The notes under the pieces are model-generated. The model was not told the DNA's origin. It saw only the letters and a program-made list of their open reading frames with translations, and made no database searches. A program made the translations under genes and the position numbers. DNA of 64,000 nt from Saccostrea cucullata (taxonomy: Eukaryota): contig NW_026935438.1 in assembly GCF_032062105.1 (NCBI RefSeq), positions 310,001 to 374,000 on the forward strand, given 5' to 3'. Positions 13,981 through 55,861 of this stretch are shown here, in pieces. Each line of letters begins with the position of its first letter. The stretch's first letter is position 1.

Positions 13981-16900
13981 ATGGCTTCCCTTTTAAACAA
14001 AGTTGTAATTATAACAGGTAAATTTTTTTTCATTTTTTGTATCGATATAAATGCTGAAATTCCTCCAGTTATTTATTGTTTTTTAGCTATTGCAATTTTT
14101 ATGTGACATAAATGAGTTCTATAGTTCATTGCTTCACTGAAGCAATTGATTGGTTGTATGTTGTTTAACGTCCCTCTCGAGAATTTTTCACTCATATGGA
14201 CACGCCTCCACTTGTGGAGAGCAGCAAATTGTGTCCTACTCGGCGGCACTCAGGACCATTGCGCAGTGATTGAATTGTTCACTTAACATAAAAGCAAGGA
14301 AGTTATATATTTATACATGTAAAGACGAATTCTATATCATTGTTTACTTTATGTTTTTATCTCATTCTAAAACAGCATATATTCATGTTCAAATTCGAAT
14401 ATTGACTCCACTTTTTTTTTATCTACGATGTTTTATTTGAATATCAGGTGCTAATTCTGGAATAGGAGCTGCAACTGCGCTTGCATTCGCCAAAACTGGT
14501 GCAAGGTTAGTTTTAGCGGCGCGGAATCAGGAGCGACTAAACGATGTAGCAAATCAATGCTCGGCAAAGGGACTACCACAAGAAAAGGCAAGTAAATAGA
14601 CGGCAAAGGGACTACCACAAAAAAAGGCAAGTAAAATAGACGGCAAAGGGACTACCACAAGAAAAGGCAAGTAAATAGACGGCAAAGGGACTACCACAAG
14701 AAAAGGCAAGTAAAATAGACGGCAAAGGGACTACCACAAGAAAAGGCAAGTAAATAGACGACAAAGGGACTACCACAAGAAAAGGCAAGTAAAATAGACG
14801 GCAAAGGGACTACCACAAGAAAAGGCAAGTAAATAGACGGCAAAGGGACTACCACAAGAAAAGGCAAGTAAAATAGACGGCAAAGGGACTACCACAAGAA
14901 AAGGCAAGTAAATAGACGACAAAGGGACTACCACAAGAAAAGGCAAGTAAAATAGACGGCAAAGGGACTACCACAAGAAAAGGCAAGTAAAATAGACGGC
15001 AAAGGGACTACCACAAGAAAAGGCAAGTAAAATAGAAGCACAAGTACGTATGCATTTCAATAAAATGTTCTGGCTGCTATTTTGAAATACATGTAGTGGT
15101 ATAGAGAATCGTTTTCATTGTATGAGGGAAGAGGTATTCAGAGAGTCACCTTTGGTTGAGAAATAGGTAAGAAATAGCTCTGCACCATCAATATCCAATG
15201 TGTGAAATGTATATAAGTTATGAATATATAATGAGTCAATTTTTTTCTTCTTGATTATGGATATAGGTATTGGTAAAAAGATGTGATGTCACGAACGAAG
15301 AGAATCTGAAAGGTTTGGTTGGATCAGCTATAGATAAATACGGGCAAATCGACATACTGGTAATAAATTTTTGATTTAAAAACATTCACATAGGCCTATT
15401 TATTTTAAATTAAACACTAATTCTTTCCTGAAGTGGAGAAGCAGAAAAACTCAACATTTATTTCAGGTAAACAATGCAGGGAGTGCTCAATATGTCAACT
15501 ATCTTGAAACAACAACGGAAGTGTTTGATACTACCTTTAATCTCAACATCCGGGCCCCCTTTTTTCTCACCAAGCTGTGTACCACACACTTGAAGAAAAC
15601 TAAAGGTGATCAAAGTACTAAGAAGTACAGAGAGCCGGGCTCATTTACAGAGTAGAATGAATTTCTTACATGAATCAAACGTTTATATTCTGATGAAAAA
15701 ATTATTTTACAACTATCAATATAAATGATAAGATACTGACAGTGAGTTTTCGTTCCTAATACCACGGTCCGATTCTGTCAGAATCAGAATTAATCTGGTA
15801 CCGCAGCTGAATGTAAACATTCCAGGCCAGTCTGGTTCCCTCTCCCGCTTTACCTCGTATGTGTAGAGAACTACGACAACACTAATTATCAAAAATCCTT
15901 ACGCTAATGAACTATGTTCTTTGACTTAGGACTGAAGTTTTCAAAGTCATTACTACTAATGTTTTATATAGATAAAACTTTGTTTTATTTTTGTTGCTTT
16001 TAGCGTTTGTATTATCTCAAAAGCGGTTGAGAGTAAGAACTATATTTTTACTCGTAACTTTAAAATGGTGACTATGGGGTGGACTTCCTGCCTTGAACAG
16101 GATGACATAAGCCGGCAATTGCTCTTTGAGCAATAAGCCCAGCTAAAAATCAAAGCTTAAATTCAGTTATGAATTAAACTGAACTAGAGGTACTGTGAGC
16201 AATGAGCTCACTAAATGATACCCCCGCCTCCCATATGTATAAAATGGCAGTGTCCATGTTTTGCTATGGGAAACCCAAAATATGTGTCGGATCAAAGAGT
16301 AAAATAGGAGGCGCACAATGGCAATATGTAATAAAGATTCTTTCAAAGTTACATCAAATTTCATTCAGTGGTATAAGAGGAGTTGCGGATAAGAGATAGG
16401 TACACCAAAGCGTAATAGACGGACGAAGGGACGGACGTACGGACGAACAGACATACCGATTACTATATACCCTCGCAAGATTCCAATAAGAAGTTTGCTA
16501 TTTTATATAGGATGTGTGGTGAATGTCTCAAGCCTTGCGGGACAACGTTCAGTAAGTTTTTACATTTAAACTTAAAGTGTTATTGTATTCATAAAGTGAT
16601 AGAGCTATAGTTTAAACTGTTAAGCATATACTGGCTGCACATGCTACTATATGTTCAGTTTTAATCCCAGTATTCGTTAAAGACACTACTTTATTCTCCC
16701 AGTTTCCGATTGCAATGGTGTACGGAATGACTAAAGCAGCCATGGACCAGTTTACAAGGACTCTGGCGGTTGGTCAGTATTTTATACAAATCACTCTCGT
16801 AGTGTTTCCTGGGTTTATTTTCATTTTTGTCATGTAAATTATCTGTTATTTACAGATCTGGTGAAAGATAGTGTTCGGGTTAATTCAGTAAAGTGAGTAA

Positions 16901-53100: not shown

Positions 53101-55861
53101 ACAGATACATAAAGTAGGTCAGACATCACGTCCCTGTGTGAGTGCATCTTTAACCTCCCATGTTATCAGTCCAGGGACAGGTGAGTGTTGTATATACACA
53201 CAGATACATAAAGTAGGTCAGACATCACGTCCCTGTGTGAGTGCATCTTTAACCTCCCATGTTATCAGTCCAGGGACAGGTGAGTGTTATTATATATATA
53301 CATAGATACATAAAGTAGGTCAGACATCACGTCCCTGTGTGCATCTCTAACCTCCCATGTTATCAGTCCAGGGACAGGTGAGTGTCATATATATACACAG
53401 ATACATAAAGTAGGTCAGACATCACGTCCCTGTGTGAGTGCATCTTTAACCTCCCATGTTATCAGTCCAGGGACAGGTGAGTGTCATATATATACATGGG
53501 TACATAAAGTAGGTCAGACATTACATCTCTTTGTGAGTGCATCTTTAACCTCCCATATTATCAGACAGGTGAGTGTCATATACCGTAAATCTGGAAATTT
53601 TTACGTCGATTTATTTTTGCGAATTTGGGTCAAAAAGCTGTTGATTAATTTTTACGCTTCAAATTTTTGCGAATTGTCACTGGTGCTAAAAATAAAAATC
53701 ACTGAAGATTTTCATATCAGGCTATGTTTCAAATAATAGTGCCTAGTTAGAATACCACCAATATACTCGCAACGTGGCAAGATATTGCAAAATCGCTCCG
53801 AAACAATTTTGATAAAAATACAAAAGGATTTGCACTGAAAATAATTTCTTAATCAATTATAACAAACATTTTAGAGGTTGTGTATGCCTTTTAACCTGAA
53901 GTATAATCCAAATGAAGAAAAAATACCGGTATAACTAATTTTCTCAACGTTTGTTTTTTTTCTCACCTAAAATTTACACGCCGCGTTTACATTTGGAACT
54001 TTCTAGTAAATGCACTGAGTTTGAGTTATCGACCATGTTGATACACGGTTAGATAAAATGACAGTTCTCTCTTTATTGGCAAATTAATTGATGAAAATAA
54101 TTAATAACGGGCATACTGCCTCAGTGCTTGTCAAATCATCGGACGATATTGCATATAATGAGGGCAATTTACACTCACGGGTAATTAACTTGTAGTTATA
54201 TAGTAGACTAGTGTAAACAGGTTTCTTTTAAAAATGACCAGTGCTTACCGACGCCTATTCACTGAGTTAAAAAACGACACGAGTTATCAGAAAAAAATTC
54301 TTCACATGTTGATTTATTTTTAAGAAAAATATTTTTGCGAATTCAATGTACGCGCAAATTTGCTAAAAATTCATCTACAGTAAAAATTTCCAGATTTACG
54401 GTATATACATAGATACATAAAGTAGGTCAGACATCACGTCCCTGTGTGAGTGCATCTCTAACCTCCCATGTTATCAGTCCAGGGACAGGTGAGTGTCATA
54501 TATATACAGTGGACCTTCAGATATCCGGATGCCAGATATCCGGATGCTTCAGTATCCGGACGATTTTTCATCGGAACGAAATTTTAAAATGTTATTCTGT
54601 CTTGTTTAACTGGTGATTCAGATATCCGGATGCTTCACATATCCGGACAAATTGACTGGGAACCAAAGCGTCCGGATAAATGAGGGTCCACTGTACATAG
54701 ATACATAAAGTAGGTCAGACATCACGTCCCTGTGTGAGTGCATCTCTAACCTCCCATGTTATCAGTCCAGGGACAGGTGAGTGTCATATATATACATAGA
54801 TACATAAAGTAGGTCAGACATCACATCTCTTTGTGAGTGCATCTTTAACCTCCCATATTATCAGACAGGTGAGTGTCATATATATACATAGATACATAAA
54901 GTAGGTCAGACATCATGTTCATGTGTGTGTGCATCTCTAACCTCCCATGTTACCAGTCCAGGGACAGGTGAGTGTGGTATACATGTATATACATAGATAC
55001 ACAAAGTGCCCATTAGTGCCCAAAACTTTGAATAAATTTGTCATTGATAAAAGGTATTTAAAAGGAAATTTACTTGACCCTAAGTGAGTCTTAATTTTAT
55101 TTTTCTGCTGAAATTCATTGAAAAAGACATTTTTCAAAAATATTATGGAGGTGTTATTTTTAGTTCATTTCTTGTAACTTTGTAGTTTTATAATATAATT
55201 TCAAAATAATTTAGCTATAGGCATTGTGGTAATATCACATGAAATGTGAAATTAAAATTTTACAACTCTTTTGAATTTCTTAATATATCGTAGGAATGTA
55301 CCATGTACATGTAAAAGCAAATGGAAATTGTAAAAAGCAGGACCATTAGATTTATTTTTAACATCATGCATGAATTCTGAATATGTTTAAATTTTTTAAA
55401 AAGTGTTGTGGTATATTCATAATATTAACATTTTAAAGAAACATTTTAAGATTGTGCCAGTCTGAGATCTCCAAAAGGTTGGCTGTGTTGTTCCGAACCA
55501 TCCTAAGTTTACAAGGAGAAAATGAGGTTTCAGCAAGGTAAAGTAGATACATGTATCAATAGAGTGTAAATTACGCAAGTACAAATTCATGGAAAGACCA
55601 TTCCTATCTTATTGATTGTATTACTGTGAGTGTTAGTCTCGCATAAAACTATTTCACTGTGAACGTTTTTGCTAAAATTGTAGGTGTGTTGAAATTTACA
55701 AAATTATTAAAACATTTATAAAATTGGGCTTGAATGATATTGTTTGCAGATTTATGGCCCCTCATATTGGACATTTACCAATGCCAGAAGACTATAGACT
55801 ACAGGAGCTAAGGAGTCTGACCAGGGACTTCTCATCTAGTTATCTCCGTGCTATCAACTGA
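38109..55861 (+). CDS. NUP98: Nuclear pore complex protein Nup98-Nup96 precursor, about 37 coding exons
   Basis: Starts [11 protein letters not shown], followed by many FG/GLFG/SLFG exons. GLEBS motif GTTLKFNPP...[28 protein letters not shown] at 39378-39545. Autoproteolytic domain [14 protein letters not shown]...[15 protein letters not shown]. Nup96 motifs [22 protein letters not shown] and [13 protein letters not shown]. Stop at 55859-55861. Confidence 0.96.
39992..40391. mobile_element. hAT-type MITE (400 bp) in a Nup98 intron
   Basis: 8-bp TSD TTTTCAAT. TIR TAGGGCTGTCACGG / CCGTGACAGCCCTA. ACCCG/AACCG subterminal repeats. Confidence 0.88.
51554..52100. mobile_element. Cluster of nested TA-targeting MITEs (inner elements 51643-51828 and 51870-52068)
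   Basis: TA|CAGTGGTCCTTCAGATATCCGG...CCGGATAAATGAGGGTCCACTG and TA|CTGTAAATCACT...AGTGATCTACAG|TA lie inside an older element starting TA|CAGTGAAACCTG. Confidence 0.7.
53583..54401. mobile_element. TA-flanked TIR element (Tc1/mariner-type, non-autonomous) inserted in the Nup96 array
   Basis: TA|CCGTAAATCTGGAAATTTTTAC ... GTAAAAATTTCCAGATTTACGG|TA. Confidence 0.85.
54507..54693. mobile_element. pogo/Tigger-like MITE (187 bp), second copy of 51643-51828
   Basis: TA|CAGTGGACCTTCAGATATCCGG ... CCGGATAAATGAGGGTCCACTG|TA. Confidence 0.85.

What the first reader, a model, noticed from the sequence alone, without database searches (positions are those of the whole stretch)
14562..55007. Recurrent tandem arrays anchored on exon 3' ends and RNA-processing signals (4 cases, 3 genes, both strands)
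Seen: four sequence-unrelated arrays (39/40 bp at 14562, 84 bp at 23707, about 32 bp at 26510, 99 bp at 53017) share one architecture. The most upstream unit in transcription direction is the real coding-exon end. The copies run downstream and each reiterates a processing signal: GC donor, stop plus AATAAA, GC donor, GT donor. I saw no array anchored on an acceptor. In all three donor arrays an in-frame stop follows the first donor, so use of a downstream copy would give a premature stop. Inference: either a mutational process coupled to transcription/splicing at exon ends, or a copy-number-variable bank of decoy U1 sites that tunes productive splicing versus NMD. Null model: random minisatellite birth filtered by selection, which should tolerate acceptor-anchored arrays about equally well.
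Basis: partly seen in the sequence, partly recalled or inferred. Interest (0 to 1): 0.85.

Follow-up and report, generated by a model that had tools for sequence, protein, structure and literature searches.

The report
Oyster splice-junction minisatellites ("mirages")
In this oyster, short stretches of DNA that straddle the end of an exon have been copied many times in a row into the next intron; this is a known, apparently harmless kind of repeat ("mirages" of amphioxus, the human F7 repeat), but here it is common across the genome and leans towards splice donors.

Summary
All four arrays are real and sit where stated, in an SDR, a sorting-nexin and the Nup98-96 gene of a rock oyster. Three span a splice donor with the real exon end as first unit; a spliced RNA contig of a relative uses that first (GC) donor. 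The fourth spans a stop codon inside the last exon, and RNA reads through it. The architecture is known: amphioxus "mirages" and human F7, CBS, IFI6, LMNB2 VNTRs. The claimed donor-only rule fails: acceptor-spanning arrays occur in this genome and in other molluscs (other first readers of this genome noted some too). A donor lean is real: CAGGTRAGT sits in triple tandem 389 times against 5, 7 and 37 for dead-motif controls, while the motif itself is only 1.8-fold enriched; one replicate was weaker (2-fold) and exactly annotated mollusc orthologues give only about 2-fold. The decoy-U1/NMD idea is unsupported: copy donors mutate at the neutral rate, in-frame stops are the norm in any intron here, and neighbouring arrays often lack the donor. 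Verdict: neutral mirage minisatellites, new in molluscs at genome scale; the cause of the border bias is open and testable.

The parts
14448..14587 (+). SDR (adh_short) coding exon ending at a GC donor (14588-14589)
   Evidence: Pfam adh_short E 3.5e-07; open frame into exon 15267-15360; same GC donor in paralogues
14562..15036 (+). Array 1: 12 units of 39/40 bp (alternating, 79-bp higher order), each 26 nt exon end + GC donor + 13-14 nt intron
23707..24105 (-). Array 2: 84 bp x4.8 spanning the stop codon (24066-24068) of the sorting-nexin gene; lies in the 3' UTR, transcribed through
   Evidence: absent from C. virginica
24066..24224 (-). Coding part of the terminal exon of the PX-BAR sorting nexin (SNX5/6-like)
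   Evidence: open frame; orthologues called PX+Vps5/BAR next to Nup98
26509..26678 (-). Array 3, distal part (about 5 units of 32 bp)
26675..27183 (.). High-copy inverted-repeat element flanked by TTAA, inserted into array 3
   Evidence: depth over 26000 in relatives' DNA and loose ends at 26671/27187; ends read
27182..27606 (-). Array 3, proximal part: 13 units of 32 bp, each 12-14 nt exon end + GC donor + intron start
   Evidence: units also in DNA of two related organisms
27593..27676 (-). Sorting-nexin exon whose GC donor (27592-27591) is the first unit of array 3
   Evidence: RNA contig length accounting 634 = 634; C. virginica orthologous donor
52987..53081 (+). Nup98-96 exon 35, GT donor at 53082; an AG|GT proto-splice site at 53017-53020 marks the start of the repeat unit
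   Evidence: tblastn and exact spliced alignment, 37 exons, 1770 aa, no stop
53017..55007 (+). Array 4: 10 units of about 99 bp (65 nt exon end + GT donor + 34 nt intron), interrupted by two insertions
   Evidence: single unit in S. echinata
53583..54401 (.). TA-flanked inverted-repeat element inserted in unit 6 of array 4
   Evidence: ends read
54507..54693 (.). Second TA-flanked inverted-repeat element, in unit 7 of array 4
   Evidence: ends read
54426..54488 (+). Downstream copy that a public annotation (isoform X2, P0175) uses as a 63-nt exon in place of the end of exon 35; the copy at 54714 fits equally
   Evidence: exact spliced alignment of P0175; may be a read-alignment artefact

Best explanation
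These are mirage-type minisatellites. A 30-100 bp tandem duplication arises across an exon border; the exon-side unit stays the real exon end (forced by geometry) and the other units become intron (or 3' UTR). Unequal exchange or slippage then changes copy number and homogenises units, and transposons insert into them. The copies are tolerated because the spliceosome takes the 5'-most donor after an acceptor; the same first-site rule makes acceptor-spanning arrays riskier, so fewer survive. The copies have no function. Arrays are several-fold over-represented at or just behind exon borders, donors above all, through raised birth or longer persistence next to constrained DNA, not through selection for the copied signal. 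Shown: anatomy, lineage-specific origin, first-donor use in one case, neutral decay of copy donors, both borders affected, donor excess. Inferred: the amplification route, the selective reason for the asymmetry, the cause of the border bias.
For: Anatomy and insertions. Recent and independent origins: array 4 absent in S. echinata and C. virginica, arrays 2 and 3 absent in C. virginica, array 1 absent in SDR paralogues; other molluscs carry unrelated arrays at other Nup98 borders. First donor used. Copy donors vary neutrally, 24 alleles against 25-29 expected. Acceptor-spanning arrays exist. Arrays often begin 8-22 nt after a donor without containing it (O. edulis at the same exon 35, Pecten x3, Biomphalaria, Elysia): donor side 11 observed, 5.5 expected, P 0.02. 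Genome-wide donor motif triples 389 against 5, 7, 37 with single motif only 1.8-fold up; CAGGT core with a non-donor tail not enriched. Myosin loci picked without regard to repeats: 4-5 of 8 arrays span a border, 1.0 expected, P about 0.01. Literature: mirages at both borders, splicing undisturbed, mechanism unclear (PMC3087553, PMC3902484); 5'-most donor selected in F7 (PMC1557585).
Against: The size of the bias is loosely bounded: AAG replicate only 365 against 177; exactly annotated Nup98 orthologues give 5 donor-spanning arrays against 2.9 expected, P 0.16; pattern counts are swollen by single repeat families and most hits could not be tied to annotated exons. Minor use of downstream donors was not measurable (contigs drop rare forms). 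In human IFI6 and CBS some pseudo-donors are used (PMC1557585), so neutrality need not hold at every locus.
Confidence: 0.6

Rival explanations
1. No positional bias at all: arrays are born at random in genic DNA; short introns (about 550-1300 bp) and 30-100 bp units make 5-10% of them straddle a border by geometry, and selection removes those inside exons and more of those at acceptors. The motif excess reflects higher array density in genes than in the genome at large.
For: Nup98 orthologues of 8 molluscs: 5 donor- and 2 acceptor-spanning arrays against 2.9 expected per side; AAG replicate 2-fold; controls are genome-wide, not gene-matched.
Against: Myosin set 4-5 of 8 against 1.0; about 65-100 loci for the donor motif against 5 loci for the GT-to-CT dead motif; excess of arrays starting within 30 nt behind donors.
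Confidence: 0.22
2. A mutational process coupled to transcription or splicing (polymerase pausing, R-loops or breaks where U1 binds) duplicates DNA specifically at 5' splice sites in the germ line.
For: Strong donor-motif excess; no raw excess for the acceptor motif (316 against 298, 1069, 2809); donor-side excess in orthologues.
Against: Acceptor and stop-codon arrays share the architecture; acceptor controls are swamped by satellite families and real acceptors are a small share of that motif, so that test is weak; first-site selection explains the asymmetry without a special process.
Confidence: 0.12
3. The arrays are a copy-number-variable bank of decoy U1 sites that tunes productive splicing against NMD.
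For: Copies keep intact donors in most units; using them would give stops or frameshifts; human CBS and IFI6 pseudo-donors are used to some extent (PMC1557585).
Against: Donor 9-mers in copies mutate as fast as the rest; stops are the default for intronic read-through; arrays are species-specific in housekeeping genes, broken by transposons, and often lack the donor; RNA uses the first donor.
Confidence: 0.04
4. The arrays are assembly artefacts.
For: Arrays 1 and 4 were not checked against reads.
Against: Units differ in patterned ways, carry transposon insertions with target duplications, and arrays 2 and 3 appear in independent DNA and RNA contigs.
Confidence: 0.02

Closest known systems
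Amphioxus 'mirage' minisatellites (Adh3, globins BflGb6/BflGb9, troponin C, PGBD5; PMC3087553, PMC3902484)
   Same: Locus-specific tandem copies of an exon-intron border, units of 10-160 bp, both 5' and 3' borders affected, splice signals kept in many copies, normal splicing undisturbed, proposed route to intron gain.
   Different: Described from a few cephalochordate genes; here in bivalves and gastropods, at roughly 2% of donors and counted genome-wide, with a donor lean, GC-donor cases and a stop-codon case. Somatic instability reported for Adh3 was not tested here.
Human donor-spanning VNTRs: F7 IVS7 (37 bp), CBS intron 13 (31 bp), IFI6/6-16, LMNB2 (100 bp), PDGF intron 4 (81 bp) (PMC1557585)
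   Same: First monomer spans the exon-intron border, identical pseudo-donors follow, the most upstream one is selected.
   Different: Different sequences and origins; polymorphism and minor pseudo-donor use are measured in humans and not here.
Intron gain by tandem duplication of an AG|GT proto-splice site (Rogers model, as cited in PMC3087553; PMC2812944)
   Same: Array 4's unit starts at an exonic AG|GT; a public isoform model splices from it to a downstream copy.
   Different: Three other isoform models and all orthologues use the first unit; the X2 model may be a gapped-alignment artefact in a tandem repeat.

Membership tests
mirage / splice-border minisatellite | Tandem units of minisatellite size (10-160 bp) | tested here: met
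   32, 39/40, 99 bp units, 10-18 copies
mirage / splice-border minisatellite | Unit spans an exon-intron boundary, with the exon-side unit being the authentic exon end | tested here: met
   Arrays 1, 3, 4
mirage / splice-border minisatellite | Unit spans an exon-intron boundary (array 2) | tested here: not met
   Array 2 spans the stop codon inside the terminal exon; RNA reads through. It works like a mirage but is a CDS/3' UTR duplication
mirage / splice-border minisatellite | Locus-specific unit derived from the host gene, not a dispersed repeat family | tested here: met
   Exon 14449-14590 matches only itself and two paralogues; single ancestral unit in S. echinata
mirage / splice-border minisatellite | Normal splicing uses the authentic site | tested here: met
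   Array 3: RNA contig of a related organism, 634 nt accounted exactly; arrays 1 and 4 by frame and protein only; minor forms not measurable
mirage / splice-border minisatellite | Copy-number polymorphism between haplotypes or cells | tested here: inconclusive
   Related organisms show different unit joins in arrays 2 and 3; no same-species genomic reads
regulatory decoy 5' splice sites / AS-NMD switch | Copy donors conserved above neighbouring sequence | tested here: not met
   24 alleles against 25-29 expected, P 0.16; GT/GC 6 against 6.0
regulatory decoy 5' splice sites / AS-NMD switch | Downstream donors used at a measurable, regulated rate | not testable with these tools
   Only assembled contigs were available

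The most novel reading that the evidence does not exclude
Oysters have a germ-line mutational process that nucleates minisatellites preferentially at exon borders, above all splice donors, at thousands of genes, and some arrays are caught turning into new introns (Nup98 exon 35 spliced from an exonic AG|GT to a downstream copy).
Probability: 0.25. Interest if true: 0.7.

Novelty: new member of a known kind. Interest (0 to 1): 0.38.

Why it matters
Mirages were known from a handful of amphioxus and human genes and their origin is stated to be unclear (PMC3087553). An oyster genome in which about 2% of donors carry one (small samples; extrapolated, thousands of loci) makes three questions countable: whether tandem duplications arise preferentially at exon borders, whether 5'-most donor selection holds in invertebrates, and how often such arrays found new introns. 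Practically they mislead gene annotation and short-read mapping, and offer gene-linked length markers. I found no paper in the held library reporting this for molluscs or at genome scale.

Tried and rejected
Acceptor pattern test: both controls were swamped by satellite families, so no acceptor rate could be derived. A first conservation test (copy donors 4.9% mismatch against 11.3%) looked like selection on decoys but counted shared changes many times; per-allele counting removed it. CAGGT as an intrinsic array seed: rejected, 1951 against 1614, though CAG motifs gave more families than AAG motifs. GC-donor enrichment: not seen. L057 as a decayed donor array: too weak, not counted. Two frames (arrays 1 and 4) were mis-indexed and redone. 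The 2002 mirage paper (PMC117041) is not held; it is cited through PMC3087553. Spliced models were searched exon by exon by reference; joined models were only built inside scripts to check frames and were not sent to any search. The N gap at 11723-11879 was left alone.
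Full report
Setting. The window is G000:C17575:310001-374000 of a 1.17-Gb, 23,869-contig assembly. Its Nup98-96 gene matches proteins named Saccostrea cucullata exactly over 37 exons and 1770 residues, so this is a rock oyster. 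The window holds a tandem cluster of short-chain dehydrogenase genes (+), a PX-BAR sorting nexin (-) and Nup98-96 (+).

The observation. All four arrays are present. Array 1 (14562-15036, 12 units of 39/40 bp) starts 26 nt before a GC donor; only that donor gives an open SDR frame into the next exon, and two paralogous exons have the same GC donor with no anchored array, so the donor is older than the array. Array 3 is one 32-bp array split by a TTAA-flanked high-copy element; its first unit holds the GC donor of exon 27593-27676, the C. virginica orthologue ends at the same base with GT and has no array, and an RNA contig from a related organism has 634 nt between two anchor exons, exactly the sum of nine exons when the first donor is used. 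Array 4 has ten 99-bp units with two TA-flanked insertions; only its first unit is preceded by an acceptor and keeps the arginine shared with other oysters, and S. echinata has a single unit. Array 2 differs: it spans the stop codon inside the terminal exon, AATAAA appears in three of four downstream copies, and RNA contigs run through it for another 500-600 nt. Arrays 2 and 3 also occur in DNA contigs of two related organisms, so they are not assembly errors.

What is not informative. That the first unit is the real exon end follows from geometry: any other arrangement changes the protein. Premature stops after the first donor are the rule for this AT-rich genome: 25 of 36 Nup98 introns have one within 39 nt and 35 of 36 within 99 nt.

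Is it general, and is it donor-only? Sixty kinase and myosin loci were fetched without regard to repeats. They hold four clear donor-spanning arrays (L004 45 bp, L032 34 bp, L036 53 bp, L056 47 bp) and a nine-copy acceptor-spanning array (L036, 37 bp) whose last unit begins a phase-compatible myosin exon that fills the gap between two Pfam matches; L058 is a two-copy acceptor duplication and L062 a probable one. In the myosin set 4-5 of 8 non-transposon arrays span a border against 1.0 expected (P about 0.01). Exactly annotated Nup98 genes of eight other molluscs give 5 donor-spanning and 2 acceptor-spanning arrays among 61, against 2.9 expected per side (P 0.16), and 6 more that start 8-22 nt behind a donor without containing it; the donor side totals 11 against 5.5 (P 0.02), the acceptor side 9 against 5.5 (P 0.09). 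O. edulis has an unrelated 31-bp x53 array 23 nt behind the very donor that carries array 4. The donor-only rule is therefore false; a lean to donors, and to exon borders generally, remains.

Genome-wide counts. Three copies of CAGGTRAGT at 31-59 bp spacing occur 389 times (26 loci, about 20 unrelated families, in the first 100 rows; about 65-100 loci by extrapolation) against 5 for the reversed motif, 37 at 5 loci for the GT-to-CT dead motif and 7 for its reverse. The single motif is only 1.8-fold enriched, 21,043 against 11,646, so random birth predicts about 2-fold. CAGGT with a non-donor tail is not enriched (1951 against 1614). The AAG variant gives 365 against 177, dominated by a few families. 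GC-donor triples number 66 against 0, about 12 families, in rough proportion to the rarity of GC donors. The acceptor motif gives 316 with many unrelated acceptor-like arrays, but its controls (298, 1069, 2809) are swamped by satellites. These counts are not gene-matched and most hits are not tied to annotated exons, so the excess is somewhere between 2-fold and about 20-fold.

Function. If the copies were decoys their donors should be conserved. Counting independent alleles over ten arrays gives 24 in the donor 9-mers against 25 (composition-matched) to 29 (random windows) expected, and 6 against 6.0 in the GT/GC dinucleotides. The arrays are species-specific, sit in housekeeping genes, are broken by transposons and often omit the donor. 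Nothing here supports a tuning device; minor use of downstream donors could not be measured because only contigs were available.

Mechanism, most likely. A short tandem duplication crosses an exon border; amplification and homogenisation follow by unequal exchange or slippage (inferred; higher-order 79-bp structure in array 1, shared variant units in array 4). The 5'-most donor is chosen, as shown for the human F7 VNTR (PMC1557585), so donor arrays are silent. First-site selection at acceptors (scanning is widely accepted for 3' sites, PMC1557585) points to an upstream copy, which would make acceptor arrays costlier (inferred). The residual excess at borders may come from raised birth there or from longer survival next to DNA that cannot be deleted; recombination at the edge of homology in a very heterozygous genome and transcription-linked breaks are candidates (my inference, untested).

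Known relatives. Tandem duplications of exon-intron borders were named mirages in amphioxus; both borders are affected, splicing is undisturbed, the generating mechanism is called unclear, and an intron-gain model was proposed (PMC3087553; PMC3902484). Human F7, CBS, IFI6, LMNB2 and PDGF carry donor-spanning VNTRs (PMC1557585). Arrays 1, 3 and 4 meet the tested defining features; array 2 is the same kind of event across a stop codon. One oddity fits the intron-gain model: array 4's unit starts at an exonic AG|GT, and public isoform X2 splices from it to a downstream copy, while X1, X3 and X4 do not. A gapped alignment in a tandem repeat gives the same picture, so this stays a lead.

Verdict. 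Real, partly as described, a new member of a known kind. The new content is the taxon and the scale, with a donor lean whose size and cause are open. Other first readers noted donor and acceptor arrays elsewhere in this genome; those notes are unchecked and not counted as evidence.

Noticed in passing
window 53017-54488: Public isoform X2 of Nup98-96 (P0175) is spliced from an exonic AG|GT at the array-4 unit start to a downstream copy; a new intron in the making or an alignment artefact.
   Followed up: partly
window 14588 and 27592: Two of only about 12 GC-donor array families found genome-wide for 31-59 bp units lie in this one window; possibly local clustering of arrays, unexplained.
   Followed up: partly
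L064 34319-36043: O. edulis has an unrelated 31-bp x53 array starting 23 nt behind the same Nup98 exon-35 donor that carries array 4: independent arrays at one intron start.
   Followed up: partly
L067 (Pecten Nup98-96): About 20 minisatellites in 30 introns; several fill an intron from 8-10 nt after the donor to 8-22 nt before the acceptor, and one 40-bp unit recurs behind two successive donors (29322, 30181).
   Followed up: no
window 27593 versus L071 4457: The sorting-nexin donor is GC here and GT in C. virginica: a GT/GC switch at a conserved position.
   Followed up: partly
window 3352-3833, 6358-6510, 7378-7733: A 21-24 bp AT-rich minisatellite family on both strands in SDR introns, not border-anchored, probably carried by a mobile element.
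   Followed up: no
window 57646-59856, also 4650-4900 and 5800-6250: 166-bp satellite arrays of the dispersed oyster type (Cg170-like, from memory); also in L049, L070.
   Followed up: no
window 12851-13323: Diverged repeat of about 142-150 bp, three to four copies, between two SDR genes.
   Followed up: no
window 3100-19000: Three tandem SDR paralogues; a further copy of the first on contig C7528 (L003), possibly a haplotig.
   Followed up: no
window 22339-22878 (-): A 180-codon open frame resembling a decayed retroelement fragment between the SDR cluster and the sorting nexin.
   Followed up: no
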